Below, one piece after another: positions 1 to 44,883 of a stretch of 64,000 nucleotides of DNA. A model generated the notes under the pieces. That model saw only the letters and a list, made by a program, of their open reading frames with translations, ran no database searches and was not told where the DNA came from. Within the stretch, counting starts at the first letter, position 1, and every line of letters begins with the position of its first letter. The position numbers were made by a program, and so were the translations under genes. Location of the stretch: the IMG/VR virus record IMGVR_UViG_3300044641_009805, positions 124,001 through 188,000 of that record; one strand, 5' to 3'.

Positions 1-588
1 AAGATTCAATCTGGTTCTTTAAAACCTAAAGACGAACAAAAAGCAATAGAGAACATAAAAAAAATAAATGGAGCTTTTGCAGGATTTGCCGTGGCAATGA
101 AAAATATTCCAAAAGCAGGAATAGCAATAAAAGACTTCAAGAAAATATTAAAAAAAGAATTAGAAGACAGTAGAAATGATAATAGAACTTCTAAAAAAAT
201 GTCAGAGCTATTTCCAAATGATTATCAGAAATTTTCAGCAGCCTTAAGTTCTTCTTTTAAAACTAAGATTAGCGTTTATGATCCTGTAAAATTGGGAATT
301 CCTTGGGATACAAATGCTGTAGTTTCTGAATTCGTGAACATGCCTGTAAAAGCTTTAAATAGATTTACTGGTAAAGTTCAAGACAGCGAACCGCCTCCAA
401 CTCCTCCTGCACCGACACCACCAGGGTCTCCACCGACACCTGCCGCACCTGATGTGAAAATTAAAGATATTTTCAAAGGTGCAAATGAACAAGACATTAG
501 AAAGTTTAATGAAAAGTTTAAAGAAAAATTTGGATTTGAACTTTCTGATAAAGATGACCTAGCTGCAATACTTGCTAGTATGACATAA
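1..588 (+). CDS. Hypothetical protein, 5'-truncated, with a Pro/Thr-rich linker
   Basis: Frame 1 is open from base 1 (KIQSGSLKPK...) into the tracked ORF 91..588; contains PPPTPPAPTPPGSPPTP. Confidence 0.7.
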   Translation, partial: KIQSGSLKPKDEQKAIENIKKINGAFAGFAVAMKNIPKAGIAIKDFKKILKKELEDSRNDNRTSKKMSELFPNDYQKFSAALSSSFKTKISVYDPVKLGIPWDTNAVVSEFVNMPVKALNRFTGKVQDSEPPPTPPAPTPPGSPPTPAAPDVKIKDIFKGANEQDIRKFNEKFKEKFGFELSDKDDLAAILASMT

Positions 589-1768
589 TGACAGAGTTAT
601 GTATTACTGCACCTAATGAATTTAATTTTTCAAAAAACAATTTAGAATATAAGTTAGAAGAGACATAAGATCCGTAAAGCTTAGAATCATTTATCACTCC
701 AAATTCTATCATAGATTTTATTGATCTAAGACAATAATCAACAGATTGTCTTTTTACGACAAAATCGCTGGTATCTGGAAGTCTAATAATGACATTATTT
801 GCTGACAAAGATCTTATTCTATCTTCATAGATTTCTTCTACATTTTTTGATTCTTCTCTTTTAGATAATAGAAATTTAATATGAGAATTGACATCAGATT
901 TTGATGATTGATTTTTTATGCAAATTGAATTAACGTAAATAGAGATTTCATCTACTTTTCTTGCATCATCTATAGAAATATTAGAAATCAGTTGGCCTAA
1001 ATTGCTAGAAAACAAAGATGCAGAACAAGCTATTGAGATATCATTAAGTTTGTTTATTCCTTCCAGATTAAACTCAACTACAATAGGATAAACTTCAATA
1101 GCTCCTCTAATTCTATTGACTTTCAGTGTATTTAAAACTTCGTCATGAAGTCCTCTAGCTATTAGAATTACAGGGTGTTTTGTTGAACTTGCTCCTTCAA
1201 GCAATAAATTAATCTCAGAAACAGATTCAACAAATCCATCAATAACGATGACTCTAGGATTTACTATTTTTATTGGTTTTTCTTCAAAAGTTTTTACTTT
1301 AAAGGTAAAACCATCAATAGCTTCAATTGAAGTAAAGTTATTGCTAGACTTTTCTACAGATATTCTGCCACCAAACCCAGCTAAAAGCACAGCGTCAAAT
1401 AATAAGTTGCTTAACGTGTTATCGTCTTTTGTTTGAGAAAAAATGATTTTTTTTAGATCATTCAAAGTAGCCTTGTTTGAAGATCTGGTTTTATCATCAA
1501 GATTAGAGTTTAATATCCTGTGTAACGTAAAGTCAAACCCACCAGGAGATATTTTTTCTGATAAAATACAATGTTCTATAATCAACCTATGAATAGCTAA
1601 TTTCAGTTGATTAGAATATTTTAAATTAAAAATTCCTTGAAATGAAGTTTTTAACAAAACTTGATCTTTTTCAAGGAATAATACTTTTTCTGTATTTAAA
1701 AAATTTCTTAAATCATCGCATACTTCTTTAAATGATTCAAGTATTTCTTTTTTTAGAAAAATTGTCAC
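575..1768 (-). CDS. GroEL/Cpn60-like chaperonin, shortened and divergent
   Basis: Apical-domain-like segment PRVIVIDGFVESVSEINLLLE...HPVILIARGLHDEVLNTLKVNRIRG, plus LNDISIAC and YEDRIRSLS (cf. LQERLAKL). Only 397 aa, and no GDGTTT motif. Confidence 0.75.
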   Translation of the reverse strand: MTIFLKKEILESFKEVCDDLRNFLNTEKVLFLEKDQVLLKTSFQGIFNLKYSNQLKLAIHRLIIEHCILSEKISPGGFDFTLHRILNSNLDDKTRSSNKATLNDLKKIIFSQTKDDNTLSNLLFDAVLLAGFGGRISVEKSSNNFTSIEAIDGFTFKVKTFEEKPIKIVNPRVIVIDGFVESVSEINLLLEGASSTKHPVILIARGLHDEVLNTLKVNRIRGAIEVYPIVVEFNLEGINKLNDISIACSASLFSSNLGQLISNISIDDARKVDEISIYVNSICIKNQSSKSDVNSHIKFLLSKREESKNVEEIYEDRIRSLSANNVIIRLPDTSDFVVKRQSVDYCLRSIKSMIEFGVINDSKLYGSYVSSNLYSKLFFEKLNSLGAVIHNSVIMSY

Positions 1769-1774: not shown

Positions 1775-1803
1775 ATTGTAGCTTATTTTTGGCTAATGTT
1801 CAA
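1775..1803 (-). promoter_or_regulatory. Sigma70-type promoter, probably leaderless, for the GroEL-like gene
   Basis: Minus strand reads TTGAAC-17nt-TACAAT-6nt-GTG start. Confidence 0.65.
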
Positions 1804-2402
1804 ATAATTTGAATATGCGAATTAATGTAAGCATGTATTATCTTACCAATAGCACCTAAAATTGCTGTACCTACTGCAATTGAAAGCCATCTAGTAAAAG
1901 CTGCTTGTTTTTGATACCAAGATTGTAATTCTTTAATTACTTCAGAATGTTGATTTATAATCTTTGCAAGATTTTCATCATTTAGTTCTTCTTTTTGAGC
2001 TAGTTTTTCTTCATGAATTTTCCAGCTTTGTATCGAATGCAACTGTTCTTCTAACTCTTCAACTCTTTCAATTTCAGCTGTACTATTTTCAACATTCTTT
2101 ATTCTTGCATATAATCCATTATCAGGATTATACAAAACTTCTCTTATTTCGTCAACTTTAAAAACTAATTGAGTCTGTGATTGTTCTATTTTTTCAATTT
2201 TGTACATTAGATTTGAGAATCCACCATTCATTGCGGGAGCTGATAGGATTCTTTTTTGCATCTCTAAAATTTGTTGTCGATTGCTTTCAATAGCATCCAA
2301 AGTTTTTTTTGTTTCAACGTTATCAAGAGGATCTTTTTTGTCAATTTTTGCATCCGAAAAGTTCGGAGAACTTACTTGCGTATTAGTTTTTTTTCTTGAC
2401 AT
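1800..2402 (-). CDS. Coiled-coil protein with one C-terminal transmembrane helix (XhlA/holin-like topology)
   Basis: AGGAGG lies 6 nt before the ATG at 2402; heptad-rich body; WLSIAVGTAILGAIGKIIHAYI at the C-terminus. Confidence 0.6.
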   Translation of the reverse strand: MSRKKTNTQVSSPNFSDAKIDKKDPLDNVETKKTLDAIESNRQQILEMQKRILSAPAMNGGFSNLMYKIEKIEQSQTQLVFKVDEIREVLYNPDNGLYARIKNVENSTAEIERVEELEEQLHSIQSWKIHEEKLAQKEELNDENLAKIINQHSEVIKELQSWYQKQAAFTRWLSIAVGTAILGAIGKIIHAYINSHIQII

Positions 2403-2541
2403 ATACATCCTCCTAGACAATGTTATTTTTTCTAAGATTAAGATTTATAATTTACTAAATCTTATTTCTAAATCTATAAATTTAGATCAATTTACTTATA
2501 GAATTAATTATAATTCTTCAGAGAATTTAAAGAGGTAAATC

Positions 2542-4470
2542 TTGCAAACATTCAATAAAAGCATATTCGAAAATAGTTCTAGACCTCTCATCATTCCTGA
2601 TGAAGTTAAGGTTATTTTTGTAGCTGATCTCTTTTCAGAGGATTATGTCGGTGGAGCAGAACTAACCACGCAGGCTTTGATTGATGAGTGCCCTTTGCCT
2701 TACATGAAAATTCGTTCAAAAGAGCTGACCATGCACTTATTAGCTCAAGGAACTAATAAGTTTTGGATCTTTGGCAATTTTGCTCAAATGAACATGGAAC
2801 TAGTTCCAAGCATAATTGGAAATTTGAACTATTCTATCCTAGAATATGATTACAAATATTGCAAGTACAGATCTCCTGAAAAACATTCTGAAAAAACCGG
2901 ATCTCCGTGCGATTGTCATAATCAATTCAACGGAAAATTAATCTCTGCTTTTTACTACGGAGCAAAAGTTTTGTGGTGGATGTCAGAGGCGCAGAAAGAT
3001 CGTTATCACAGAATGTTCCCATTTTTATCTGAAAAAGATAATGTTGTCTTATCAAGCGTATTTTCGAAAAAAACCCTAGGTACCATCAAGTGGCTTAGAG
3101 AAGTTGTTTCTTCATCAGGATCAGATCGAAAAGGATGGGTAGTCTTAGGTTCAGAATCTTGGGTAAAAGGAGCTCAAGCTGCAGAAAAATGGTGCCTGGA
3201 CAACAAAGTAGAATATGAAGTTGTCTGGAATGTAGCTTACGAAGTCATGTTGGAAAAGCTAGCTAATGCAGAAGGGTTTGTATACCTTCCAGCAGGTGCT
3301 GATACCTGCCCAAGAATGGTCATAGAAGCGAAGCTTTTGGGTTGCAAACTTCATTTGAACGAAAACGTACAACATAAAAATGAAGATTGGTTCTCTACAA
3401 ATAACATTGAAGAGATTGAAGAGTACTTGTTTGGAGCACCAACTCTATTTTGGAATTACATAAAAAAGATGATGGAATATCGTCCTAACATCAGCGGATA
3501 CATGACGGTTTATAACGCATTGTCTCAAGAATATCCATTTATACAGTGCGTTAAGTCTATGCTTCCTTTTTGCGAGGAGGTTTGTATTGTTGATGGAGGT
3601 TCTACAGACGGCACTTGGGAGAAGCTTCAAGAATTGTCATCTACGGAAACAAAGATCAAACTGAAGCAAGTGACAAGAGATTGGAGCCATCCTAGATTTG
3701 CTGTTTTTGACGGAATGCAAAAAGCAGAAGCCCGTTCCATGTGCACAGGAGATTTTTGTTGGCAAATGGATTCAGATGAAATAGTGCACGAAGACGATTA
3801 TGAAAAAATATTAAACTTATGTGCAAAATTTCCAGCTAACGTAGATCTTATATCATTACCAGTTGTTGAATATTGGGGAGGTCCTAAGAAAGTTAGAGCC
3901 GACGTTCTTCCTTGGAAGTGGAGATTAAGTAAAAATAAGAAAAATATCACTCACGGAATACCTTCAGATGCTCGTCGAACTGATGAAAATGGAAATCTTT
4001 ATGCGGCTTATGGAGATGGATGTGACATGATAGATTCATCATCTTACGAAAGAATACCTCACGTAACTTTTTACACTTCTGAAGTTGACAGTGCAAGAAA
4101 GCAAGCAGTTTCCGGTGACGCTGAAGCAATAAAGAATTATCAAGAATGGTTCAACAAAGTCGTCGATAATTTGCCTGGAGTATTTCATTATAGCTGGTTT
4201 GATCTGCCCAGAAAGATTAAACTGTATAAGAAATATTGGACCAAACACTGGGAATCGTTGTCTGGAAAATCTTATGAAGATACTTCAGAATCAAATATGA
4301 TGTTTGATGTTCCTTGGTCACAAGTGACAGATGAAATGATAGAAGCTAGAGCTTCTGAACTCTCGGAAAAATTAGGCGGGTGGATTTGGCATCAAAAATG
4401 GGATGGTAAGACGAAAACTCATCATATAACGATAAGCAAATCTCAACCTAAAATTATGTTAGATAAATGA
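2542..4470 (+). CDS. Two-domain glycosyltransferase (GT-B/GT4-like N-half fused to GT2 C-half)
   Basis: N-half VGGAELTT...DTCPRMVIEAKLLGC; C-half YMTVYNA...IVDGGSTDGT...MDSDE; AGAGGT SD before a TTG start. Confidence 0.85.
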   Translation: MQTFNKSIFENSSRPLIIPDEVKVIFVADLFSEDYVGGAELTTQALIDECPLPYMKIRSKELTMHLLAQGTNKFWIFGNFAQMNMELVPSIIGNLNYSILEYDYKYCKYRSPEKHSEKTGSPCDCHNQFNGKLISAFYYGAKVLWWMSEAQKDRYHRMFPFLSEKDNVVLSSVFSKKTLGTIKWLREVVSSSGSDRKGWVVLGSESWVKGAQAAEKWCLDNKVEYEVVWNVAYEVMLEKLANAEGFVYLPAGADTCPRMVIEAKLLGCKLHLNENVQHKNEDWFSTNNIEEIEEYLFGAPTLFWNYIKKMMEYRPNISGYMTVYNALSQEYPFIQCVKSMLPFCEEVCIVDGGSTDGTWEKLQELSSTETKIKLKQVTRDWSHPRFAVFDGMQKAEARSMCTGDFCWQMDSDEIVHEDDYEKILNLCAKFPANVDLISLPVVEYWGGPKKVRADVLPWKWRLSKNKKNITHGIPSDARRTDENGNLYAAYGDGCDMIDSSSYERIPHVTFYTSEVDSARKQAVSGDAEAIKNYQEWFNKVVDNLPGVFHYSWFDLPRKIKLYKKYWTKHWESLSGKSYEDTSESNMMFDVPWSQVTDEMIEARASELSEKLGGWIWHQKWDGKTKTHHITISKSQPKIMLDK

Positions 4471-5189
4471 AAGGCGTAATATTAGCAGGTGGTACTGGAA
4501 GTCGTTTATATCCTTTAACAAAATCGACCAACAAATGTTTGCTTCCAATTGCAACCAAGCCGATGGTTTATCATGTTTTAGAATTGATGACTTCTTCAGG
4601 AATTGATGACATCATGTTGATCACAGGTCCTGAAAATGCAGGACAAGTCATGAATTTGTTGGGGTCAGGACTTGATTATTCCTGCTCTTTGACTTATAGA
4701 ATTCAAGATAAAGCTAACGGCATAGCAGCAGCAGTAAATCTTTGCAAGAGTTTTGTTGGAAACTCTAAATTTACCGTGTTATTAGGAGACAATATTTTTA
4801 GCGATTTTTCTAAACTAGCATCGCAAATTCGTGAGTTTTATTCATCGAAGGATGAATTTAGACTTTTCTTAAAAGAAGTAATAGACCCTCAAAGGTTCGG
4901 AGTACCAGTTTATCTTAATGATGAAGTTGTAGATATAATCGAAAAACCAAAATCTCCTCCTAGCAATAAAGCAATAGTGGGATTATACTGTTATTCTTCA
5001 AACGTCTTTGATGTGATTGAAGGTTTAAAGCCTTCTTCTCGCGGAGAATATGAGATATCGGAGTTAAATTCTTATCTAGTGAAAAATTGTAGTGGTAGCT
5101 TTTTTGATGTTGAATGTGAATGGGTAGACGCAGGAACTCATGAATCTTACAAAAAAGCTAATGAAATGATTTGGGAAACTTTAAAATGA
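4467..5189 (+). CDS. rmlA: Glucose-1-phosphate thymidylyltransferase
   Basis: MKGVILAGGTGSRLYPLT, LGDNIF, IIEKP, SRGEYEI, WVDAGT. Confidence 0.92.
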   Translation: MKGVILAGGTGSRLYPLTKSTNKCLLPIATKPMVYHVLELMTSSGIDDIMLITGPENAGQVMNLLGSGLDYSCSLTYRIQDKANGIAAAVNLCKSFVGNSKFTVLLGDNIFSDFSKLASQIREFYSSKDEFRLFLKEVIDPQRFGVPVYLNDEVVDIIEKPKSPPSNKAIVGLYCYSSNVFDVIEGLKPSSRGEYEISELNSYLVKNCSGSFFDVECEWVDAGTHESYKKANEMIWETLK

Positions 5190-6007
5190 AAGTAATCATC
5201 GGATCAGGGAAAGTAGCTAACATTATAAAAGATAAAGAAGACATTGTCTTGTCTCATTCGCAAATAGAGATTAAAGATGAAATGTCGATTGACTCGATTC
5301 TTTCTACATTTCCTGAAAAAACAGTAGTTGTAAACACTGCCGCTAAGATTAATCTAGAATGGTGCGAAGAGAACAAAAAAGAATCTGAACTAGTCAACGT
5401 AGTTGGTGCAGTAAACGTTGCAAAAATTTGCAAAAAATATCATCATCATCTATTACACGTTAGCAGCGGTTGCATTTTTGATGGAATGGAAACAGAAAAA
5501 GAGTATACTGAATTAGATGATCCATCACCAGCTTCTTGGTACGCACAAACTAAAGCAAATGCTGATATTTCGATCTTATCTTTGGGATATCAAAATATTA
5601 CGATAGTTCGACCTAGGCAGTTAATATCAGCTGTTCCTAATCCCACAAATATGTTAACTAAGTTTATGAATTTGCAAAAAGGCAATTTTATTGATTCAAA
5701 AAATTCTATTACTTGTATAGAAGATATGAAACTAATGATTGATCACCTGATTAGTAACAAATGTTATGGAGTCTATAATCTTGCAAACGTTGGTTGGATG
5801 AGCCCGTACCAAATAGCCAACAAAATAAAAGCTAAAATTTTTAGTGATTTTATCATCGATAAGATAAGCTACGATGATTATATAAAGAGTATAAAAGTAA
5901 AAAGAGTTAACACTTTACTAAGCGTAGACAAATTAATATCTACGGGATTTGTTCCCAGAAGTGCAGAGGAAGCTTTAGAATGGTGTTTAGAAAATTACGG
6001 GAATTAA
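5186..6007 (+). CDS. NDP-4-keto-6-deoxyglucose reductase of the RmlD superfamily, most like bifunctional 3,5-epimerase/4-reductase NRS/ER
   Basis: NLEWCE, SSGCIF, YAQTK (YxxxK), NPTNMLTK, NSITCIED; ATG at 5186 overlaps the rmlA stop (ATGA). Confidence 0.8.
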   Translation: MKVIIGSGKVANIIKDKEDIVLSHSQIEIKDEMSIDSILSTFPEKTVVVNTAAKINLEWCEENKKESELVNVVGAVNVAKICKKYHHHLLHVSSGCIFDGMETEKEYTELDDPSPASWYAQTKANADISILSLGYQNITIVRPRQLISAVPNPTNMLTKFMNLQKGNFIDSKNSITCIEDMKLMIDHLISNKCYGVYNLANVGWMSPYQIANKIKAKIFSDFIIDKISYDDYIKSIKVKRVNTLLSVDKLISTGFVPRSAEEALEWCLENYGN

Positions 6008-6008
6008 A

Positions 6009-6947
6009 ATGAAGGTAATCATTACAGGAGGAGCAGGATTTATTGGAGGTCATGCTGTTAGACATTTCTTAAGCTTAGGAGATTCTGTTCTTAACATAGA
6101 TAAACTTACTTACGCAAGCAAAAAAACTAACTTTGAAAATTCAAATTTTCTTCAGTTGGATATTTGCGAAACAGAGATTTTGATAGAACAAATCAAAAAA
6201 TACAATCCTGACTTTTTAATTCATTTTGCAGCAGAAACCCATGTAGATAATTCCATATTAGATTGTAATGATTTTATTCACTCCAACGTTAAAGGTGTTG
6301 CCTCAGTCTTAAATGCATGTAAAGCAACCGGTACAAAATTGTGTCACATTTCCACTGACGAAGTATATGGTCCAGCATATGATAGATCTTTTGTAGAAAG
6401 TGATCCATTAAATCCTTTAAATCCTTATTCAGCTACAAAAGCTTCAGGAGATTTGTTGATAAAATCTTATAAAAATACTTACGGGTCAGATTACATCATT
6501 GTTAGACCTTCTAACAACTACGGTCCAAATCAACATTCTGAAAAATTTATACCAAAGTTGATTGATTGCTTGAAAAAAGGTATTCAATTCCCTCTTTATG
6601 GAGATGGACGACAAGAAAGAGAATGGACATACGTAGAAGACACGGTAAAGTTAATAAGGATTTTGTTAACTTCTGAATCTGCAGAATGGAATTCTTGTTA
6701 TAATTTAAGTTCTGGAATGACATTCACAAATATAGAGACAGCTTCTCATGTGATAAAGACCTACAATCTTATTACAAATAACAATTTTGATATTTTTGAT
6801 GTGTTAAAAACATCAAAAGATAGACCCGGACATGACAAAAAGTATTGGATTTCTACAAAAAAGCTAAATTCTGTTGTAGATTTCAAATATATTGGATTTC
6901 AATCTGGGATAGAAAAGACAGTTTCTTCTTATGTCCAAGAACAATAG
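6009..6947 (+). CDS. rmlB: dTDP-glucose 4,6-dehydratase
   Basis: GGAGFIG, DKLTYA, HFAAETHVDNSI, ISTDEVYG, PYSATKA, NNYGPNQHSEKFIP, DRPGHDKKY. Confidence 0.95.
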   Translation: MKVIITGGAGFIGGHAVRHFLSLGDSVLNIDKLTYASKKTNFENSNFLQLDICETEILIEQIKKYNPDFLIHFAAETHVDNSILDCNDFIHSNVKGVASVLNACKATGTKLCHISTDEVYGPAYDRSFVESDPLNPLNPYSATKASGDLLIKSYKNTYGSDYIIVRPSNNYGPNQHSEKFIPKLIDCLKKGIQFPLYGDGRQEREWTYVEDTVKLIRILLTSESAEWNSCYNLSSGMTFTNIETASHVIKTYNLITNNNFDIFDVLKTSKDRPGHDKKYWISTKKLNSVVDFKYIGFQSGIEKTVSSYVQEQ

Positions 6948-7671
6948 ATTCGTTTTTGTATCACCCATGTATAATGCATCCGAAACCTTGCCTCGGATGC
7001 TTCATTCTATTTGTGGTCAATCTTATGATAATTGGCGAGTTATTTTGATCGATGATCTTTCTTCTGAAGAGCACGTCAAGAACTGCAAAAAAATACAAGA
7101 TGACTTTTCTTCAATGTTGGATCAATCCTACAAAAATAAAATTGAAGTTATATGGAACGTTGAAAAAAAATGGGAAGTTGCAAATGTCTTAATGGGAATC
7201 TCTAAATGCAATGATGATGACATTGTTTGTCGGATAGATGCTGACGATTGGTTAACAGATCTTGATGCATTAACGATTATCAATCATGCATATACTGAGA
7301 CAAATTGCGATGCATTGTGGACAGCGCATAGATGGAGTTTTTCTGATAAAAATATCAGCAGACCAATGCCAGATGATGCTGATGTATACGCTTATCCTTG
7401 GGTTTCAAGTCATTTAAAAACCTTTAGAAAAACTTTGATAAATGAAGTTAAAGATGAAAACTTTAGAGGTGAAGATGGAAACTATATTAGAAGAGCAGGT
7501 GATCAAGCGATATATCTACCAGTTCTTCACAAGTCTAAAAAGAGATTGTTTTTACCAAGAGTAATGTATCATTATACCATCAAAGATGTCCCTGAAACGT
7601 ATCAAACTGATGATGCTAGATTTCAAAAAGACGAAGCTATCTTTTTAAGAAAACGTGGGTTTGTAAAATGA
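6931..7671 (+). CDS. Glycosyltransferase family 2
   Basis: SPMYNA, ILIDDLS, RIDADDW (DxD motif). Confidence 0.88.
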   Translation: MSKNNRFVFVSPMYNASETLPRMLHSICGQSYDNWRVILIDDLSSEEHVKNCKKIQDDFSSMLDQSYKNKIEVIWNVEKKWEVANVLMGISKCNDDDIVCRIDADDWLTDLDALTIINHAYTETNCDALWTAHRWSFSDKNISRPMPDDADVYAYPWVSSHLKTFRKTLINEVKDENFRGEDGNYIRRAGDQAIYLPVLHKSKKRLFLPRVMYHYTIKDVPETYQTDDARFQKDEAIFLRKRGFVK

Positions 7672-8030
7672 AACAGCAAAATTTTCATGATTCTATCTCT
7701 AAACTATTGGTCGAAAGACTTTCAAAAAGAAAAAATCAAATTTTGAATAAAGCAACTTGCGTTGAGATTTATAATGATATATTTTTCACATTGTCTGAAG
7801 TGATAAAAACAGCTTCGACGCCTTTGTCAAATGAATCCGTGAATTTTTTAGCTCAAATGTACTATGACTCTATAAACATAAACGAGACTCAAGAATTAGA
7901 TCCTAACATCTTTACTCAAAGAGCTAGTTTAAAAAATATTGAAACTAAAGAAATCGCTTTAATGGCTGTCATGCTAAATGGCACTGAATTCGCTACGCCT
8001 TTCATTTCAGAGGTAAAACGAAGATCGTGA
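7668..8030 (+). CDS. Hypothetical protein
   Basis: 120-aa ORF translationally coupled to both neighbours; no recognised motif. Confidence 0.65.
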   Translation: MKQQNFHDSISKLLVERLSKRKNQILNKATCVEIYNDIFFTLSEVIKTASTPLSNESVNFLAQMYYDSININETQELDPNIFTQRASLKNIETKEIALMAVMLNGTEFATPFISEVKRRS

Positions 8031-8956
8031 AAATACATTTAGACAACGTGAATATGGGATCTAATTCAGGTCCAAATTCTTTTGCAAAGAGACTTGCAAA
8101 AGGCCTTATAGAATCCGGGCATGAGGTAGAAATTTATGATGGAAGAAATTCAGATGTTTCTTTGGTTTTTATTGAACCTAGTGGTAGACCCTTGGCAAAG
8201 AAAGTCATTCAAAGACTTGATGGAATTTGGTTTTCTCCATCTGAATTTCATGTAAAAAATGTTAACATAAAATCATTGTATCAAAAAGCCGATGGTGTGA
8301 TCTGGCAATCAGAATTTGATAAGAATATGGCATCAAAATGGTGGGGAATTCCAAAAAATGGAAAAATCATATTGAATGGCATAAATGCTGAACCCGTTAA
8401 ACAGTTTAAAATTTCTTCATTAGAACAAATTAGACAAAAGTATGAAATGCTTTTTGTCTGTTCAGCAAATTGGCACTCACAAAAAAGACTTGAATCTAAC
8501 GTTGAGTTATTCAAGCATTTACAAAGTTTTTATGGTTCAGCCGCGCTCATAGTGATGGGTTCAAATCCAAAAATGATTCCTGACGTAGACATATTCTACA
8601 CAGGACCTCAACCTCATGAAGTTTGTCTAGAAGTATTCTCTGCTTCAAATTGGATGATTCACCTTGCTTGGTTAGATCATTGTCCTAATACGGTGGTAGA
8701 ATCTTTATCTCAATTTACTCCTGTTATTTGTTCGGAGCAAGGAGGCACAAAAGAACTAGTTAAGAATTTTGGAGTGATTTTAAAAGAGAATCAACCATAT
8801 GATTACGAACTAGTCAACTATGATAATCCTCCAAAAATAGACGTGAGCCAAATAAAAGAAAAACTTCCAGACCTAAAAGACAAAAAGCCTGACACAGACG
8901 TCTCAATGAATAGAGTCATAAATGATTATCTAACATTTTTTAAAGAACTATTATGA
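8027..8956 (+). CDS. Glycosyltransferase, GT4-like
   Basis: SGPNSF, IILNGI, QKRLE, DHCPNTVVESLS...GGTKELV. Confidence 0.85.
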   Translation: MKIHLDNVNMGSNSGPNSFAKRLAKGLIESGHEVEIYDGRNSDVSLVFIEPSGRPLAKKVIQRLDGIWFSPSEFHVKNVNIKSLYQKADGVIWQSEFDKNMASKWWGIPKNGKIILNGINAEPVKQFKISSLEQIRQKYEMLFVCSANWHSQKRLESNVELFKHLQSFYGSAALIVMGSNPKMIPDVDIFYTGPQPHEVCLEVFSASNWMIHLAWLDHCPNTVVESLSQFTPVICSEQGGTKELVKNFGVILKENQPYDYELVNYDNPPKIDVSQIKEKLPDLKDKKPDTDVSMNRVINDYLTFFKELL

Positions 8957-9852
8957 AAATAGCCATAAATAGAAAGCCGATAGACGGACCTTGGGGCGGC
9001 GGAAACAATTTTGTTAGAGCAGTATATGCAACTGTTCCTTCTGGCATAACCATTACTAATAATCTGTCAGAAGATGTTGATTCCATATTTCTAATGGATC
9101 CTAGAAAAGAAAATGGAATGTTTGACGCAAATGACGTCTACAAATTTGTATCTTCTGTTAAAAAAATTCCAGTTGTTCAAAGAATCAATGAATGTGATGC
9201 TAGAAAAGGTACTGAACACATGGATAGTTTGCTCTTACAATGTAGCATCTTAAATACAAAAACAATTTTTGTTAGTAACTGGATGAAAGATTACTTCAAT
9301 AAAAAAGGGTGGAATTGTAAGAAACAATACGTTATGCACAACGGAGTAGATGACACTTTCATTGAAAATAGAAAGAACAACTCATATACTCGTTCAGATA
9401 ATAAACTCAAAGTAGTAACTCATCATTGGTCTAACAATTCTTTAAAGGGATTTGACGTATACGAGTTTATTGATTATTTGACCACGAAAGAAAGAAATAT
9501 TGAATTTACTTACATCGGAAGAGAAAGAGGTACCTTTAACAATACAAAAATAATTCCTCCAATTCACGGAGAAGAGTTAGCAAAAGAGTTAGCAAAACAT
9601 GATGTTTATATAAGTGGATCAAGACATGACCCAGGACCTAATCATGTTTTAGAATCTATTGCTGTAGGTTTGCCAACATACGTTCATGTTGAAGGTGGCG
9701 GATCTGTAGAATTCGCAGGCATAGATCATGTCTATAAGAATTTTTTTGAAATTGAAAAGTTGTTGCTTAGCAGAGATTTGAAGAATAATTCTTATGATAT
9801 TTTAAGATGGTCTGATTCAATGAAACATTTTTGGAATATAATTTTTCAATGA
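8953..9852 (+). CDS. Glycosyltransferase, GT4-like
   Basis: GPWGGGNNF, HNGVD, KGFD, DPGPNHVLESIAVGLP. Confidence 0.85.
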   Translation: MKIAINRKPIDGPWGGGNNFVRAVYATVPSGITITNNLSEDVDSIFLMDPRKENGMFDANDVYKFVSSVKKIPVVQRINECDARKGTEHMDSLLLQCSILNTKTIFVSNWMKDYFNKKGWNCKKQYVMHNGVDDTFIENRKNNSYTRSDNKLKVVTHHWSNNSLKGFDVYEFIDYLTTKERNIEFTYIGRERGTFNNTKIIPPIHGEELAKELAKHDVYISGSRHDPGPNHVLESIAVGLPTYVHVEGGGSVEFAGIDHVYKNFFEIEKLLLSRDLKNNSYDILRWSDSMKHFWNIIFQ

Positions 9853-10751
9853 ATAAGGTGTTTGTCTTACCTCCATCTGAGGATTGGATAGTCGATAGAT
9901 TTGTCAAAGAATGGAATGAAGATAATTCAGACATAAGTGTTAACCACCCAAAAGACGCAAATGTAGTTTGGTTATTAGCTGATTGGGCTTGGCAAAATCT
10001 GTATCAATCAGGTTGGTTAAACGGGAAAAAAGTTTTGACCACCGTTCACCACATTGTTCCTGAAAAATTTAATTCTTTAGCTTATCAAGAATTTATGTTT
10101 AGAGATAAGTTAACGACAGCATATCACGTTTACAACGAACAGACTAAAGACTTTATAAGTAGATTAACAAAAAAAGAAGTATTCGTGGTACCATATTGGG
10201 CAAATCAAAAGATATGGAAAGCAACTGGAAGTAAAAACGATTTAAGAAAAAAATATAATTTGCCGTTGAATTCATACTTGGTAGGATCTTTTCAAAGAGA
10301 CACGGAAGGATCTGATTTGATAAGTCCTAAATTAGAAAAAGGTCCAGATTTGCTGGCCGATTATCTAGAAAAAGTTGTTAAAAAGAATCCTGACTTGCAT
10401 GTTGTTTTGGCTGGATGGAGAAGACAGTATATAATCTCTAGACTAAAAAAATCTGGAATACCATTCACATACGTCGAGAGACCTCCTCATGATGTAATAA
10501 ACGAGTTGTATCAAACTCTTGATTTATATCCTGTGACAGCAAGATGTGAAGGAGGCCCTCAATCTTTGATAGAATGTGGACTATTAAATGTTCCAGTAAT
10601 TTCAAGAAACATAGGAATAGCTACGCAGGTTCTTCCTCTTCATTCTATTCATGACGATGTTAGTTTAGCTATTCCTTCAATTCCTGATGTTGAATCTTGG
10701 AAATTGCCACAAGGATATCAAGGATATCGAAATCTAATATCTGCCATGTAG
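9849..10751 (+). CDS. Glycosyltransferase, GT4-like
   Basis: EKGPD, EGGPQSLIECGLLNVPVIS (Ex7E); ATG at 9849 overlaps the previous stop. Confidence 0.85.
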   Translation: MNKVFVLPPSEDWIVDRFVKEWNEDNSDISVNHPKDANVVWLLADWAWQNLYQSGWLNGKKVLTTVHHIVPEKFNSLAYQEFMFRDKLTTAYHVYNEQTKDFISRLTKKEVFVVPYWANQKIWKATGSKNDLRKKYNLPLNSYLVGSFQRDTEGSDLISPKLEKGPDLLADYLEKVVKKNPDLHVVLAGWRRQYIISRLKKSGIPFTYVERPPHDVINELYQTLDLYPVTARCEGGPQSLIECGLLNVPVISRNIGIATQVLPLHSIHDDVSLAIPSIPDVESWKLPQGYQGYRNLISAM

Positions 10752-10765
10752 ATAAGGAGACAAAT

Positions 10766-11680
10766 ATGTCGATTACAATTGCAGTTACAACTTTTAATAG
10801 ACTAAAGTACGCTAAGTCTCTTTTTAAATCTTTAGAAAATGTAAAAAGCAATAATCAACTTATTGTTGTTGATAATTGTAGCACTGAAAAAGGTTTGCAA
10901 GATTATCTCTTTGATCTCAAGAAATCTAACTTGATAGACGATCTATTTTTGAGAGATCCTAAAGAAAGAAATTGGGTAAATGATGAATATGTTGCTAAGA
11001 ACATGATCATCGAGACTGCAAAAAATGACGTGATTTTATTTTTGCAAGATGATTTGCAGCTGATTGTTAATAATGAAGTTTTTGAAAAAACAGTTCAAGA
11101 TTTTATTAGCTTTGATGAGGCGAAAGCATTAGAAGTAAATGCTGTTAGAAACTCGACCGTATCTAACAGGTATGATGCCGATAACTGCGAAGTTTTTAAG
11201 CTCGAAAATTACAAATATTACAAACCGATAGACAATCATTTTCCCACAATGGGATTCTTCAAAAAAGAAGTTTTTGACTTAATTGGGAAATACCCAGTAG
11301 ATTGGCCTCAGACTCAAGATTATTGGGGAAGATCAGAAGACTGGTACGATAACGAAGTAAAATTAAAATTAAAAGATCAGATGAACTATTCTAGTTGGGT
11401 CCCTCTATTTGCTCCTGTGTGGAATGACCCTAGAGGAGGATATGCTTTCATTAGAGGTAATAAGAGGTATGGTTATTATTTAGACGCTCCATCTACTTCT
11501 GGTATGTACTATGAAAAATTGTCTGATGAACAGTATCAACAAAAACAAAATTCTAGGATTCCATTGGGGTTTACTGACGTTTGTAAATCAGATGGTTGGG
11601 AATACAAGGTGGTTAATAAAGACCAGGTAAAATATCCACAAAACAAAATTCTTTTAGAAGGACCTGAAGAGGAATTTTGA
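10766..11680 (+). CDS. Glycosyltransferase family 2
   Basis: AAGGAG SD; IAVTTFNR, IVVDNCS, FLQDD. Confidence 0.82.
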   Translation: MSITIAVTTFNRLKYAKSLFKSLENVKSNNQLIVVDNCSTEKGLQDYLFDLKKSNLIDDLFLRDPKERNWVNDEYVAKNMIIETAKNDVILFLQDDLQLIVNNEVFEKTVQDFISFDEAKALEVNAVRNSTVSNRYDADNCEVFKLENYKYYKPIDNHFPTMGFFKKEVFDLIGKYPVDWPQTQDYWGRSEDWYDNEVKLKLKDQMNYSSWVPLFAPVWNDPRGGYAFIRGNKRYGYYLDAPSTSGMYYEKLSDEQYQQKQNSRIPLGFTDVCKSDGWEYKVVNKDQVKYPQNKILLEGPEEEF

Positions 11681-12813
11681 TGAACGTTTTAATATTTCCT
11701 ACAGATGATAGAAGTGGACTAGCTTCTATGATCTACCACTATTCAAAATTGGGACATAAAGTTTTTGTTCCTAAAAAAGGAACGCTTGGTCTAAACTGGC
11801 AAAGAATAGCAACTTGGCCTGCTATGCTTTGTAAATCTTTTGAAGACAAAACAAAAAGAAATTTAGAAATTTATCCATTTGAAGAAAATCTTTCTTTTTT
11901 TGGAGAAGATTACTTTTTGAAAGATTTTAAATCTCATAATCTTTATGAAGAAGACATCTATTGTCAAATCATAGATTTGACAAAACAAAAATGTTCAATT
12001 GATGTATTCCACACCTTGCGAGGCGGCGAAAGTTCTTTACGCCAATATTTCAAAATAGCTTCAGAATATTTCCCAAATGCAAAATGGGTATCTTCAACAA
12101 TGAATGCTTGGGATAGTTCACCTGAAAATTACAAAACAAGAAACGCCGCTAAATTTATTCCTGCAAACTATGAAAATAAAAATACAGACGTAAACAATGT
12201 TAATGTCTTTTGTCTGCCATTCGAAAAGTCATTACTTGACATCACGAATGTCTCTATTTCAGGTTACGAAGATGTTTCTTTTGCTTCGTTTAACCACAAC
12301 TTTGAAGTAAGACAACCAGAAGACTATAAGATATTCAAGAAAATGAATTCCTTGCTTAGAGAAATCAATCTACCAGAAGTAATAAACTTCGGTGGAAACA
12401 TCCGTAGCGCAGGAGCTGACATTAGATATTCAAAAGAAAATGGCGTGACTGGTAAATTTCCTACAATCACGCCCAGACAATCTTACAAAATTACGTCTAG
12501 ATTAAAGGCAGCCGTTCATTTCAAGCAGACCGATTGGGGAGGTGGCGTTTTTTATTATTGCTTAAATTCTGGAACTCCCATCATTACGACCAATAGGTAC
12601 GTTAATTCTTCAAACGCTTCAAAGTATCTTATAGATAACATTAATTGTATTCTTGTCGATGATGCTTTAAAAGCATCAAATTCAATTGAAAAATTGTTAT
12701 TTGATGATTCTTACGTTAATAAATTAAGAAATGGAATGTTAGAACTTCAAAAAGAGATTCTTAATAATTCTTATTGGAAAAAGTGGGAAAATTTTATTGG
12801 AGAACTAACATGA
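11680..12813 (+). CDS. Putative GT-B glycosyltransferase
   Basis: C-terminal DWGGGVFYYCLNSGTPIIT...LIDNINCILVDD resembles the GT4 nucleotide-binding region; operon context. Confidence 0.55.
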   Translation: MNVLIFPTDDRSGLASMIYHYSKLGHKVFVPKKGTLGLNWQRIATWPAMLCKSFEDKTKRNLEIYPFEENLSFFGEDYFLKDFKSHNLYEEDIYCQIIDLTKQKCSIDVFHTLRGGESSLRQYFKIASEYFPNAKWVSSTMNAWDSSPENYKTRNAAKFIPANYENKNTDVNNVNVFCLPFEKSLLDITNVSISGYEDVSFASFNHNFEVRQPEDYKIFKKMNSLLREINLPEVINFGGNIRSAGADIRYSKENGVTGKFPTITPRQSYKITSRLKAAVHFKQTDWGGGVFYYCLNSGTPIITTNRYVNSSNASKYLIDNINCILVDDALKASNSIEKLLFDDSYVNKLRNGMLELQKEILNNSYWKKWENFIGELT

Positions 12814-13637
12814 AAGATACTTTATTTCTTTTGGTCACTTGTACGAAAGATGTGACTAGATTTGAGATACTAAAACAAGTTGTTGATAATCTAGTTCATG
12901 TAATTGATAAAAAAACGTTAGATGATTTGTTGGTATTTGATAATGCTTCTTCTTACGAAGGCAGCGTAAAATTATTGACAGACAATTTTGTTAACGTTTA
13001 CCAATCAAAAACCAACATTGGACTTTGGAGCGCAATACATTGGTGCTTAAAAAATTACCAATCTTTGATGAAAAGAGACTACAAATATCTTTACATTATC
13101 GAGTCAGACTTAATTCATTCCAATGACACTCTAAAAAAATTAGAAACATGTGAATCATTTTTAGAATCTAACAGTGAAGTAGGATTTATAAGGACAGAAG
13201 AATTTTTAGTTTCACAAAGACATTTGTACGATAAAGGAAGCCCAAAAAAAGATTCAAGAAAATACGCCTGGGTAACTCAAAATAACTTTATCCAAAACAA
13301 AAGAGTAGAGTTTTTTCAGTCAGATTGTGACGGTATGTATAAATGCAATTTTTTGGCAAAACTACCAGCCCTCAGCAGAATTCAAACTATGAAAGAAGTT
13401 TTTTTAGATCTTTCTAACTTAAAAAAGTTCAATGAGACTGATTATCAAAAGTTGTACTATCAAAGATATAAAATTTCAGCTGTCTTAGACGGAGGCATAT
13501 TTCATTCTAAGTTAGGAAATGAAAATACGGATGTAGTCATCAACGGCAGCAGGAATTACAACCTTAGCATTGATTACAGACCGACTAGATCTGATTCAAT
13601 AACTGAAATTTCTTTAGACGATGTTGTTAAACTTTGA
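12810..13637 (+). CDS. Putative GT2-like glycosyltransferase
   Basis: LVFDNASS, NIGL, YIIESD. Confidence 0.65.
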   Translation: MKDTLFLLVTCTKDVTRFEILKQVVDNLVHVIDKKTLDDLLVFDNASSYEGSVKLLTDNFVNVYQSKTNIGLWSAIHWCLKNYQSLMKRDYKYLYIIESDLIHSNDTLKKLETCESFLESNSEVGFIRTEEFLVSQRHLYDKGSPKKDSRKYAWVTQNNFIQNKRVEFFQSDCDGMYKCNFLAKLPALSRIQTMKEVFLDLSNLKKFNETDYQKLYYQRYKISAVLDGGIFHSKLGNENTDVVINGSRNYNLSIDYRPTRSDSITEISLDDVVKL

Positions 13638-13662
13638 ACAGTTTTTTTCGTGAAAGTATAAT
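13634..13662 (+). promoter_or_regulatory. Sigma70-type promoter, probably leaderless
   Basis: TTGAAC-17nt-TATAAT-7nt-ATG(13670); no SD. Confidence 0.7.
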
Positions 13663-13669
13663 TTGAACG

Positions 13670-14695: not shown

Positions 14696-14696
14696 T

Positions 14697-17965: not shown

Positions 17966-17967
17966 TC

Positions 17968-17996
17968 TTGATCATTTTTTTATTTTTTCTTATAAT
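17968..17996 (+). promoter_or_regulatory. Sigma70-type promoter, probably leaderless
   Basis: TTGATC-17nt-TATAAT-6nt-ATG(18003); no SD. Confidence 0.7.
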
Positions 17997-18002
17997 CTTT
18001 GT

Positions 18003-18935: not shown

Positions 18936-18939
18936 ACTA

Positions 18940-18963: not shown

Positions 18964-18967
18964 AACA

Positions 18968-44866: not shown

Positions 44867-44883
44867 TGAAAGAATGAAATAAC

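What the first reader, a model, noticed from the sequence alone, without database searches (positions are those of the whole stretch)
5186..6007. Rhamnose pathway without RmlC: reductase resembles eukaryote/giant-virus bifunctional NRS/ER
Seen: rmlA, this gene and rmlB are adjacent, with no cupin RmlC in the window. The protein has NLEWCE, GCIF, NPxNxxTK and NSxT motifs that I recognise from plant NRS/ER (UER1)-type 3,5-epimerase/4-reductases rather than typical bacterial RmlD (STDYVF). Its glycine-rich loop is reduced (IIGSGKVA). Inference: a three-gene L-rhamnose route like that of Mimivirus and chloroviruses, here in a bacteriophage.
Basis: partly seen in the sequence, partly recalled or inferred. 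Interest (0 to 1): 0.65.

Follow-up and report, generated by a model that had tools for sequence, protein, structure and literature searches.

The report
Phage rhamnose pathway without RmlC
A freshwater jumbo phage carries a tight three-gene operon (rmlA, an unusual RmlD-like reductase, rmlB) whose reductase has the catalytic Cys/Lys pair of plant and Mimivirus two-in-one epimerase/reductases, so it probably makes an activated L-rhamnose-type sugar without the RmlC enzyme that bacteria and known phages need.

Summary
rmlA (4467-5189), the SDR "X" (5186-6007) and rmlB (6009-6947) form a translationally coupled operon in a tailed jumbo phage. No RmlC was found in the window or in the 278 kb record, which is 84% complete. 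All four motifs and the IIGSGKVA loop are present.

X fails the RmlD equivalog model (95 bits against a cut-off of 224). Its Cys96 and Lys159 align with Cys108 and Lys175 of Mimivirus L780, the residues shown to be needed for epimerisation. In trees X falls with Cys/Lys-bearing proteins, including NRS/ER, apart from canonical RmlD (support 100/99).

X is not close to the eukaryote/giant-virus NRS/ER clade. It is a deep phage lineage in a large clade of mostly uncultured phages and Patescibacteria. Its partners are bacterial-type RmlA and RmlB.

- **Phage loci:** none of 87 viral or metagenomic loci carrying such genes has RmlC nearby.
- **Patescibacteria:** 3 of 23 genomes with the Cys/Lys type have RmlC, against 6 of 7 with the canonical type.
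- **Control:** cultured phages with canonical RmlD keep rmlC in the cluster.

The most likely function is a bifunctional 3,5-epimerase/4-reductase. Activity, product and nucleotide are untested. I rate it a new variant of a known kind.

The parts
2542..4470 (+). Glycosyltransferase (GT2 domain at residues 322-443), first gene of the co-directional block. Its stop overlaps the rmlA start (ATGA).
   Evidence: the same 638-648 aa GT2 gene precedes rmlA in related phage contigs L001 and L003
4467..5189 (+). rmlA-like glucose-1-phosphate nucleotidylyltransferase, 240 aa. It corresponds to the catalytic domain only of the 'long' RmlA type. Nucleotide specificity is untested.
   Evidence: PF00483 165.9 bits; TIGR01208 209.6 and TIGR01207 197.1 bits, both below their equivalog cut-offs
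5186..6007 (+). X: an RmlD-fold SDR of the Cys/Lys (NRS/ER-like) clade, 273 aa. Proposed NDP-4-keto-6-deoxy-D-glucose 3,5-epimerase/4-reductase.
5201..5218 (+). Dinucleotide-binding loop G6-S-G8-K-V-A11 (GxGKxx), one residue shorter than the GxxGxxG of RmlD and NRS/ER. Gly6 and Gly8 are invariant.
   Evidence: the AF2 model places strand 2-5 and helix 9-14 here
5471..5473 (+). Cys96 codon (in SSGCIFD). It aligns with Arabidopsis NRS/ER Cys115 and Mimivirus L780 Cys108.
   Evidence: invariant in A1/A2; role of L780 Cys108 from PMC9614988
5540..5554 (+). Tyr119-x-x-x-Lys123, the SDR catalytic pair for 4-keto reduction. Ser94 (5465-5467) supplies the third residue of the triad.
5660..5662 (+). 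Lys159 codon (in NPTNMLTKF). It aligns with NRS/ER Lys183 and L780 Lys175.
   Evidence: invariant in A1/A2; role of L780 Lys175 from PMC9614988
6009..6947 (+). rmlB, an NDP-glucose 4,6-dehydratase of the bacterial/archaeal type, 312 aa.
   Evidence: TIGR01181 289.8 bits; best PDB matches are bacterial/archaeal RmlB at 205-215 bits, Mimivirus R141 at only 115 bits
6931..7671 (+). GT2 glycosyltransferase overlapping the rmlB end. It is a candidate user of the sugar made by the operon.
   Evidence: PF00535 64.6 bits; conserved after rmlB in L001/L002
7668..22248 (+). Rest of the glycan island. It holds GT4/GT1 and GT2 genes, a PseB-like dehydratase (13670-14695), a DegT aminotransferase (14673-15839), a GNAT (15826-16362), a UDP-glucose-dehydrogenase-like gene (18003-18935), a PD-(D/E)XK nuclease (18968-19786) and two GT1 genes (19844-22248).
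   Evidence: low GC of 0.30-0.35

Best explanation
X is a bifunctional NDP-4-keto-6-deoxy-D-glucose 3,5-epimerase/4-reductase of the NRS/ER (UGER) mechanistic type. It works in a three-gene, RmlC-independent route.

1. RmlA activates glucose-1-phosphate, most likely to dTDP-glucose and possibly to UDP-glucose.
2. RmlB makes the 4-keto-6-deoxy intermediate.
3. X alone epimerises C3 and C5, using Cys96 and Lys159 as the acid/base pair, and then reduces C4 with NAD(P)H through Ser94/Tyr119/Lys123.

The product would be NDP-L-rhamnose, with 6-deoxy-L-talose as the less likely stereochemical outcome. The flanking glycosyltransferases of the phage's 20 kb glycan island would use it.

Shown here: gene order and coupling, fold, residue conservation, clade membership, and the lack of RmlC in the phage record, in related phage loci and in most Patescibacteria that carry the same enzyme type. 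Inferred: the two catalytic activities, the product, the nucleotide and the acceptor.
For: 1. Cys96 and Lys159 align with L780 Cys108 and Lys175 and with NRS/ER Cys115 and Lys183. The L780 pair was identified as catalytic and confirmed by mutagenesis (PMC9614988). Both residues are invariant in the family. Canonical RmlDs have Tyr/Phe and a variable residue at these positions.
2. X fails the RmlD equivalog model, at 95.2 against 224 bits. Its best PDB sequence matches are NRS/ER (E = 1e-19) and L780 (E = 5e-17).
3. Of the 144 best full-length representatives among 1.8 billion proteins, 114 have the Cys and 127 have the Lys.
4. An IQ-TREE analysis separates canonical RmlD from the Cys/Lys clade at 100/99. 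The split holds at SH-aLRT 99 after adding six independently chosen RmlDs.
5. All 28 loci holding the family (the window's own record and an identical copy, L008, included) have rmlB immediately downstream and 23 have rmlA immediately upstream. None of the 87 fetched loci or records scanned has RmlC within +/-10 kb. Five large related viral records and the window's own record lack PF00908.
6. As a control, GenBank phages with canonical RmlD (156 records) are the same groups that carry RmlC (169 records), and rmlC lies in the same cluster (rmlC-rmlD in phAPEC8; rmlB-rmlD-rmlA-rmlC in the Acinetobacter phage).
7. In 251 Patescibacteria genomes, 23 of the 30 best loci are the Cys/Lys type. They typically sit in rmlB-X-rmlA operons, and only 3 of the 23 genomes have RmlC, never on the same contig. 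Of the 7 non-Cys/Lys loci, 6 have RmlC in the genome. Fisher's exact test gives p = 0.0009.
8. X-RmlA and RmlB-X fusion proteins exist.
9. The AF2 model is confident (pLDDT 96.9) and shows the RmlD/NRS-ER fold, with TM 0.87 to 7jid.
Against: - There is no biochemical evidence for any member of this phage or Patescibacteria lineage.
- Overall similarity does not favour NRS/ER. The family profile scores 4qqr at 104.5 bits and B. anthracis RmlD at 103.4 bits. Home-made HMMs, which are not comparable in breadth, score X higher on the RmlD set. Foldseek ranks RmlD structures first.
- The phage family is a deep branch next to the RmlD branch in the unrooted tree, so 'Cys/Lys clade' depends on the root lying on the RmlD side.
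- The phage record is 84% complete and the host could supply RmlC.
- Patescibacteria genomes are incomplete MAGs.
- Retrieval of the viral loci used a pattern containing the Cys motif, so the Cys in those loci is not an independent observation. The Lys is independent.
- Rhizaria carry RmlC-NRS/ER fusions (PMC6556577), so the two enzyme types are not universally exclusive.
Confidence: 0.65

Rival explanations
1. X is only a 4-ketoreductase with canonical RmlD function. The phage boosts the host's dTDP-L-rhamnose pathway and relies on host RmlC, or on an rmlC gene in the unsequenced ~16% of its genome.
For: X has the RmlD fold and matches PF04321. The family profile scores Gram-positive RmlD as high as NRS/ER. 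The record is 84% complete. Phages often carry partial pathways; that last point is general knowledge, not tested here.
Against: X scores far below the RmlD equivalog cut-off. It sits on the other side of a 100/99 split from 13-19 canonical RmlDs. The epimerase Cys/Lys pair is invariant, which RmlD does not need. No rmlC is found in any of the 87 fetched loci or records, whereas phages with true RmlD keep rmlC in the same cluster. Free-living carriers of the same enzyme type mostly lack RmlC and have no host to borrow it from.
Confidence: 0.12
2. X is an RmlC-independent 4-ketoreductase that does not epimerise. It would make NDP-D-fucose or NDP-D-quinovose directly from the RmlB product, as Fcd-type enzymes do.
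For: This reading equally explains the three-gene operon and the absence of RmlC. No assay excludes it.
Against: It gives no reason for strict conservation of Cys96 and Lys159 at exactly the positions shown to drive epimerisation in L780. The only characterised members of the Cys/Lys clade are bifunctional epimerase/reductases. I could not fetch an Fcd reference sequence, so Fcd's own residues at these positions were not compared.
Confidence: 0.13
3. X is an epimerase/reductase with a different outcome. It might epimerise C3 only or C5 only (like Megavirus Mg535, a C3-epimerase/4-reductase), or reduce with the opposite C4 stereochemistry. The product would then be 6-deoxy-L-talose or a rarer 6-deoxyhexose rather than L-rhamnose.
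For: The phage family is a separate deep lineage, only 22-24% identical to 7jid and 4qqr in the Foldseek alignments. RmlD-fold enzymes with a conserved Cys that perform only one epimerisation are known (Mg535; PMC9614988). The island contains many glycosyltransferases of unknown specificity.
Against: Both members of the acid/base pair are conserved, as in the double epimerases. The upstream enzyme is an ordinary retaining RmlB, not a 4,6-dehydratase/5-epimerase like Mg534.
Confidence: 0.1

Closest known systems
Mimivirus L780 (UGER, UDP-L-rhamnose synthase; PDB 7JID)
   Same: RmlD-type SDR fold (TM 0.87). The catalytic Cys and Lys are aligned, as is the Tyr-x-x-x-Lys pair. It is virus-encoded and works without RmlC. 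L780 accepts dTDP- as well as UDP-linked substrate (PMC9614988).
   Different: Only about 22-24% identical (Foldseek alignments). L780 lies in the eukaryote/giant-virus clade, which excludes the phage family (100/99). Its partner is the eukaryote-type UGD R141, not a bacterial RmlB. Mimivirus encodes no RmlA for the pathway and L780 is not clustered with R141 (PMC9614988). Its glycine loop is GxxGxxG, against GxGKxx here.
Arabidopsis NRS/ER (UER1; PDB 4QQR) and the C-terminal domain of RHM
   Same: It is the best single-sequence PDB match (E = 1.1e-19). It shares the motifs N[LV][ED]WCE, GCIF, NPxNxxTK and NSxT. Cys115, Lys183, Thr113, Tyr144 and Lys148 align with Cys96, Lys159, Ser94, Tyr119 and Lys123. 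The roles of the Arabidopsis residues are from my own recollection of Han et al. 2015; the numbering agrees with the alignment.
   Different: It belongs to a different subclade and to a eukaryotic UDP-sugar pathway. In RHM the domain is fused to a UGD-type dehydratase. Here the enzyme stands alone between bacterial-type rmlA and rmlB.
Bacterial and phage RmlD (dTDP-4-dehydrorhamnose reductase; e.g. E. coli RfbD, phage phAPEC8 gp100)
   Same: Same fold, same Pfam family PF04321, same catalytic Tyr/Lys, and the same neighbours rmlA and rmlB.
   Different: RmlD has Tyr or Phe in place of Cys96 and no conserved Lys159. It is always accompanied by rmlC in the phage controls. X fails the TIGR01214 cut-off and is separated from RmlD in trees.
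Uncharacterised Cys/Lys-type RmlD homologues of Patescibacteria (CPR), including RmlB-X and X-RmlA fusions
   Same: Same catalytic residues, the same three-gene rmlB/X/rmlA module, the same lack of RmlC and the same shortened GxGxxG-type loop.
   Different: They are cellular rather than viral. The gene order is rmlB-X-rmlA rather than rmlA-X-rmlB. They branch apart from the phage family, whose nearest sisters P0135, P0137 and P0139 also sit in phage-like contigs. None is characterised.
GDP-L-fucose synthase (GMER/WcaG/FX)
   Same: It is a mechanistic analogue: one SDR active site performs 3,5-epimerisation with a Cys plus a base, followed by 4-reduction. The L780 residues were identified by comparison with it (PMC9614988).
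   Different: It belongs to a different SDR family, uses a GDP-mannose-derived substrate and uses His rather than Lys as the base (my own knowledge). X gives no significant match to NF047922.

Membership tests
RmlD, dTDP-4-dehydrorhamnose reductase (NCBIfam TIGR01214 equivalog) | Score at or above the curated equivalog cut-off (224 bits) | tested here: not met
   95.2 bits, matching profile positions 23-252 only
RmlD, dTDP-4-dehydrorhamnose reductase | Extended-SDR RmlD fold with a catalytic Tyr-x-x-x-Lys | tested here: met
   PF04321 93.7 bits; AF2 pLDDT 96.9; Foldseek TM 0.85-0.88 to RmlD structures; Y119/K123
RmlD, dTDP-4-dehydrorhamnose reductase | Groups with characterised or canonical RmlD in a tree | tested here: not met
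   The split between RmlD (13 rows) and the Cys/Lys clade (54 rows) has support 100/99. With 19 RmlDs the SH-aLRT is 99. X lies on the Cys/Lys side.
RmlD, dTDP-4-dehydrorhamnose reductase | Works downstream of a separate RmlC (an rmlC gene in the cluster or genome) | tested here: not met
   No PF00908 in the 278 kb record, in 5 related viral records or in the 87 fetched loci or records. The record is 84% complete, so absence is not absolute.
NRS/ER / UGER bifunctional 3,5-epimerase/4-reductase | Catalytic Cys and Lys for epimerisation (L780 Cys108/Lys175; NRS/ER Cys115/Lys183) | tested here: met
   Cys96 and Lys159 align to them and are invariant in the family
NRS/ER / UGER bifunctional 3,5-epimerase/4-reductase | Ser/Thr-Tyr-Lys triad for NAD(P)H-dependent 4-reduction, and a dinucleotide-binding loop | tested here: met
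   Ser94, Tyr119 and Lys123 are conserved. The loop is present but is the variant GxGKxx rather than GxxGxxG.
NRS/ER / UGER bifunctional 3,5-epimerase/4-reductase | Falls in the same clade as the characterised enzymes, to the exclusion of RmlD (broad Cys/Lys clade) | tested here: met
   The reference P0190 matches 4qqr at 305 bits and 7jid at 218 bits. This depends on rooting on the RmlD branch.
NRS/ER / UGER bifunctional 3,5-epimerase/4-reductase | Member of the narrow eukaryote/giant-virus NRS/ER-RHM clade | tested here: not met
   The NRS/ER clade (100/99) lies inside a 31-row clade (100/99) that excludes the phage family
NRS/ER / UGER bifunctional 3,5-epimerase/4-reductase | Partnered with a UGD/RHM-type UDP-glucose 4,6-dehydratase in a UDP-sugar pathway | tested here: not met
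   The neighbour is a bacterial/archaeal-type RmlB (205-215 bits to bacterial/archaeal RmlB structures, against 115 bits to Mimivirus R141), and an RmlA-like nucleotidylyltransferase is present
NRS/ER / UGER bifunctional 3,5-epimerase/4-reductase | Converts NDP-4-keto-6-deoxy-D-glucose to NDP-L-rhamnose without RmlC (enzyme activity) | not testable with these tools
   Only indirect evidence is available: the anti-correlation with RmlC in viruses and Patescibacteria

The most novel reading that the evidence does not exclude
The Cys/Lys-type RmlD homologues of uncultured phages and Patescibacteria would be a widespread, so far undescribed prokaryotic and viral RmlC-independent route to L-rhamnose (rmlA + rmlB + one bifunctional enzyme). 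They would also be the long-missing prokaryotic stock from which the eukaryotic NRS/ER and RHM enzymes arose. In the trees the eukaryote/giant-virus clade is nested among them. RmlB-X fusions built on a bona fide bacterial RmlB already show the RHM architecture.
Probability: 0.3. Interest if true: 0.75.

Novelty: new variant of a known kind. Interest (0 to 1): 0.6.

Why it matters
RmlC is treated as an obligatory step, and as a drug target, in prokaryotic L-rhamnose synthesis. The surveys I read assign the one-enzyme epimerase/reductase route to eukaryotes and giant viruses only, and the rml route with RmlC to bacteria and phages (bioRxiv 10.1101/854612; PMC6556577). A conserved rmlA-X-rmlB module without rmlC in many uncultured phages and Patescibacteria would add a third, hybrid layout.

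It would also bear on an open question. Yin et al. 2011 (PMC3220709) wrote that it is unknown how and when the first 3,5-epimerase-4-reductase arose, and at that time they found only four bacterial homologues. The enzymes found here are small, well-folded candidates on which that question can be tested directly.

There are practical consequences too. Automatic annotation calls these genes 'dTDP-4-dehydrorhamnose reductase', so pathway reconstructions that require RmlC will wrongly score such genomes as rhamnose-negative. A single enzyme replacing RmlC and RmlD could also simplify enzymatic synthesis of NDP-rhamnose.

Tried and rejected
- **Fold comparison.** Foldseek against the PDB cannot separate RmlD from NRS/ER, because all score TM 0.8-0.88. 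It is therefore not used as evidence either way.
- **Home-made HMM contest.** The NRS/ER HMM was built from 110 close relatives of one clade. The RmlD HMM was built from 13 diverse sequences that had themselves been selected as top hits to X. X scored higher on the RmlD HMM (171 against 116 bits). I do not treat this as a valid test, because the two models differ in breadth and in selection bias, but I report it as a warning that overall similarity is not decisive.
- **AU test of 'RmlD + phage family as one side of a branch'.** It did not finish. It is also not informative, because the phage family is the branch next to RmlD in the unrooted tree in any case. I dropped it.
- **The search for related loci with the broad alignment A1.** It failed for lack of a conserved stretch. 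With A2 the genome collection gave only one locus, from a Peregrinibacteria genome.
- **GenBank phages.** They hold no member of the family. The only hits are 7 weak ones, in human faecal 'Bacteriophage sp.' records, at least five of which also rank among the listed E. coli RfbD matches.
- **Other searches.** No FdtA-type isomerase was found and the window has no tRNAs. The Bockhaus 2020 paper is not held, and no open paper naming Cys115/Lys183 was found.
- **Not attempted.** I did not try complex prediction or the read-mapping tools, because no claim here rests on binding or expression. I did not compare with Fcd-type reductases, because I had no reference sequence.
Full report
**1. What is there**

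The window is bases 124001-188000 of a 278,435-base IMG/VR virus record estimated to be 84% complete. A tail sheath (53649-56684) and a baseplate wedge protein (28338-30173) mark it as a contractile-tailed jumbo phage. Its nearest cultured relative by sheath protein is Microcystis phage Mel-JY01, at only 31% identity. Related contigs (L001, L004) come from JGI environmental metagenome samples; the sources do not name the habitat.

Four co-directional genes are packed without gaps at 2542-6947:
- a GT2 glycosyltransferase at 2542-4470;
- an rmlA-like nucleotidylyltransferase at 4467-5189;
- the flagged gene X at 5186-6007 (273 aa from the ATG);
- rmlB at 6009-6947.

The first two junctions are ATGA overlaps and the third has a 1-nt spacer, so this is an operon.

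Family scans support the assignments:
- rmlA matches PF00483 at 166 bits and TIGR01208/TIGR01207 at about 200 bits.
- rmlB matches TIGR01181 at 290 bits. Its best solved relatives are bacterial and archaeal RmlB at 205-215 bits, with Mimivirus R141 far lower at 115 bits.
- X matches PF04321 (RmlD_sub_bind) at 94 bits but only reaches 95 bits on the RmlD equivalog model, whose cut-off is 224.

No RmlC was found. PF00908 has no match in the whole record. A maximum-sensitivity phmmer search with E. coli RfbC finds nothing better than E = 0.8. There is no FdtA-type cupin either.

**2. The residues that matter**

In a phmmer search of the PDB, the best matches of X are:
- Arabidopsis NRS/ER (4qqr), E = 1.1e-19;
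- Mimivirus L780 UDP-L-rhamnose synthase (7jid), E = 5e-17;
- bacterial RmlD (4wpg), E = 6e-15, ranked after both.

In those alignments, X Cys96 (SSGCIF) pairs with 4qqr Cys115 and with L780 Cys108 (chain numbering is +3). X Lys159 (NPTNMLTK) pairs with Lys183 and Lys175. X Ser94, Tyr119 and Lys123 pair with Thr113, Tyr144 and Lys148.

The Chem Rev review PMC9614988 reports that L780 is bifunctional, accepts both UDP- and dTDP-linked 4-keto-6-deoxyglucose, and that Cys108 and Lys175 are key catalytic residues confirmed by mutagenesis. Cys96 and Lys159 are invariant in alignments of the family and its nearest relatives, and GCIF occurs in 127 of 128 full-length family members. Canonical RmlDs carry Tyr or Phe at the Cys position and no conserved Lys at the other.

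The glycine loop is a variant, not a ruin. RmlD and NRS/ER read GxxGxxG, the phage family reads GxGK[VF]x, and Patescibacteria relatives read GxGxxG. Gly6 and Gly8 are invariant. The AlphaFold model (pLDDT 96.9) shows a normal strand-loop-helix there.

**3. Relatives and phylogeny**

The word-based search found 194 relatives of 270-286 aa at 46-77% identity, all metagenomic and several on contigs of 100-280 kb. The protein atlas labels the nearest clusters as mostly Uroviricota, followed by Saccharimonadota and Bacillota.

The exhaustive representative search gave 10,015 hits. Of the 144 best full-length hits, 114 carry the Cys and 127 carry the Lys. Among them are 611-716 aa proteins in which an RmlB domain is fused to an X-like domain. 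In three of these (P0144, P0148, P0149) the RmlB domain scores above the equivalog cut-off, and P0144 is from a Patescibacteria bacterium.

For reference NRS/ER sequences I used P0190 (305 bits to 4qqr and 218 bits to 7jid, with no RmlD hit below 1e-10) and its relatives. These include a Pithovirus protein, a MMETSP eukaryote transcript and a Dependentiae protein.

A careful IQ-TREE analysis (67 rows, LG+C20+F+G4 PMSF) gave these results:
- Canonical RmlD (13 rows) and the Cys/Lys clade (54 rows) are separated with ultrafast bootstrap/SH-aLRT support of 100/99.
- The phage family is monophyletic (96/96).
- Its sisters are P0135, P0137 and P0139 (98/94), which also sit in phage-like contigs next to rmlB and, for P0137, rmlA.
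- The eukaryote/giant-virus NRS/ER clade (100/99) lies inside a 31-row clade (100/99), together with Patescibacteria and other viral sequences, that excludes the phage family.

Adding six independently chosen RmlDs (Enterococcus, Listeria, Klebsiella phage, Acinetobacter phage, phAPEC8 and a faecal contig) left the RmlD versus Cys/Lys split at SH-aLRT 99.

It is also not a close relative of plant or Mimivirus enzymes. It is a deep, phage-borne branch of a large and mostly prokaryotic/viral Cys/Lys clade.

Two cautions apply. In the unrooted tree the phage family is the lineage next to the RmlD branch. Overall similarity does not discriminate either: the family profile scores 4qqr at 104.5 bits and B. 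anthracis RmlD at 103.4 bits, and Foldseek ranks RmlD structures first.

**4. Does the enzyme type do without RmlC?**

I tested this in three ways.

(a) Related viruses. Eighty IMG/VR loci were fetched with up to +/-10 kb flanks and analysed together with seven other loci. In all 28 loci holding the family (the window's own record and an identical copy, L008, included), rmlB lies immediately downstream on the same strand. In 23 of them rmlA lies immediately upstream. Thirty of the 59 more distant Cys/Lys loci also have rmlB within the locus, mostly adjacent. None of the 87 has an RmlC. PF00908 is also absent from five related viral records of 107-181 kb.

(b) Control. In GenBank phages, tblastn with E. 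coli RfbD finds 156 records and with RfbC finds 169. These are the same phage groups (Escherichia 107 and 106, Klebsiella 8 and 8, Campylobacter 5 and 5, Acinetobacter 3 and 3), and rmlC lies in the same cluster. phAPEC8 reads rmlB-rmlA-rmlC-rmlD, and the Acinetobacter phage reads rmlB-rmlD-rmlA-rmlC. Phages with a true RmlD thus keep rmlC, and the RfbC query detects phage RmlC readily.

(c) Cellular carriers. I searched an even sample of 251 Patescibacteria genomes.
- Of the 30 best matches to the family profile, 23 are the Cys/Lys type. They commonly sit in rmlB-X-rmlA operons, and two are X-RmlA fusions.
- Only 3 of those 23 genomes contain RmlC, never on the same contig.
- The 7 matches without the Cys/Lys pair have RmlC in 6 genomes, and in 3 of them RmlC lies within the 1.5 kb flanks of the match.
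- Fisher's exact test gives p = 0.0009. The background rate is 94 of 251 genomes with RmlC.

These genomes are incomplete MAGs. Even so, the contrast and the operon structure point the same way.

**5. Mechanism proposed**

RmlA makes NDP-glucose. It is most likely dTDP-glucose, because the best family matches are thymidylyltransferases, but they fall below the equivalog cut-offs, so UDP remains possible. RmlB makes NDP-4-keto-6-deoxy-D-glucose. X then epimerises C3 and C5 through Cys96 and Lys159 and reduces C4 through Tyr119 and Lys123, using NAD(P)H, to give NDP-L-rhamnose. The activities, the product and the nucleotide are inferred, not shown.

Rivals:
- An ordinary RmlD relying on host RmlC (confidence 0.12).
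- A non-epimerising reductase giving D-fucose or D-quinovose (0.13).
- An epimerase/reductase with a different stereochemical outcome, such as 6-deoxy-L-talose or a single epimerisation as in Megavirus Mg535 (0.10).

The sugar is presumably used by the surrounding 20 kb glycan island (2542-22248). The island holds at least eight glycosyltransferase-like genes and a second PseB/DegT/GNAT-type amino-sugar pathway. The acceptor, whether virion proteins or the host surface, is unknown.

**6. Comparison with what is known, and novelty**

The surveys I could read state that the one-enzyme epimerase/reductase (udp) route is confined to plants, fungi, algae, nematodes and Mimivirus, and that bacteria, archaea and phages use the rml route with RmlC (bioRxiv 10.1101/854612; PMC6556577). 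Yin et al. 2011 speculated that a prokaryotic donor might already have had an integrated 3,5-epimerase-4-reductase, but found only four bacterial homologues and called its origin unknown (PMC3220709).

My literature searches found no description of a phage or Patescibacteria enzyme of this type. GenBank phages contain no member of the family. The library searched is incomplete, so prior description cannot be excluded.

I therefore rate this a new variant of a known kind. The catalytic solution (NRS/ER/UGER) is known. The lineage and the pathway layout, with bacterial RmlA and RmlB, are new to phages and ultra-small bacteria.

**7. Verdict**

- My confidence that X is a bifunctional, RmlC-independent epimerase/reductase is 0.65.
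- Interest is 0.6.

Noticed in passing
window 53649-56684, 56737-59808, 60011-63076 (+): Three tandem paralogous tail-sheath-like genes of 1011, 1023 and 1021 aa. The first and second are 32% identical and the second and third are 52% identical. Only the first was scanned against PHROGs, where it matched tail sheath. A triplicated sheath gene is unusual.
   Followed up: partly
window 2542-22248 versus 44000-64000: The glycan island has a GC content of 0.30-0.35, while the structural module further along has 0.44-0.48. This suggests the island has a different origin or composition from the rest of the phage.
   Followed up: no
window 13670-16362 (+), 18003-18935 (+): A second nucleotide-sugar pathway lies in the same island: a PseB/FlaA1-like dehydratase (PF02719, 277 bits), a DegT aminotransferase (273 bits) and a GNAT acetyltransferase. 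It resembles the first steps of pseudaminic-acid or bacillosamine-type sugar synthesis. There is also a short (310 aa) UDP-glucose/GDP-mannose dehydrogenase-like gene.
   Followed up: partly
window 18968-19786 (+): A PD-(D/E)XK nuclease gene (PF12705, 64 bits) sits in the middle of the glycosyltransferase island, between the dehydrogenase-like gene and two GT1 genes. Those two GT1 genes give weak sub-threshold hits to the 'GT4 in conflict systems' family PF20706.
   Followed up: no
proteins P0144, P0148, P0149 (locus L128:3182-5143); loci L094 and L098: Prokaryotic fusions occur in Patescibacteria and other MAGs. One kind joins a bona fide bacterial RmlB (TIGR01181, 432-467 bits, above its cut-off) to an X-like domain, giving 622-716 aa proteins with an RHM-like architecture. 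The other kind is an X-RmlA fusion of 544-552 aa.
   Followed up: partly
proteins P0179, P0191, P0202, P0214, P0222, P0250, P0273, P0276; P0144, P0150: Inside the Cys/Lys clade, one subclade has Met and another has Tyr in place of the catalytic Cys while keeping the Lys. These may be secondary losses of the epimerase function. I did not check whether those lineages have regained an RmlC partner.
   Followed up: no
loci L030-L087 (IMG/VR): A second, distinct group of viral contigs carries Cys/Lys-type genes only 27-35% identical to X. About half have rmlB within the locus, mostly adjacent, and none has RmlC. In the tree they branch nearer to the eukaryote/giant-virus NRS/ER clade than the window's family does. 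I did not determine whether they are phages or giant viruses.
   Followed up: partly
window 1-588 (+), 575-1768 (-), 1800-2420 (-): The ORF that runs off the window start contains a proline-rich stretch (PPPTPPAPTPPGSPPTPAAP). The two minus-strand ORFs upstream of the island (397 and 206 aa) have no Pfam match.
   Followed up: no
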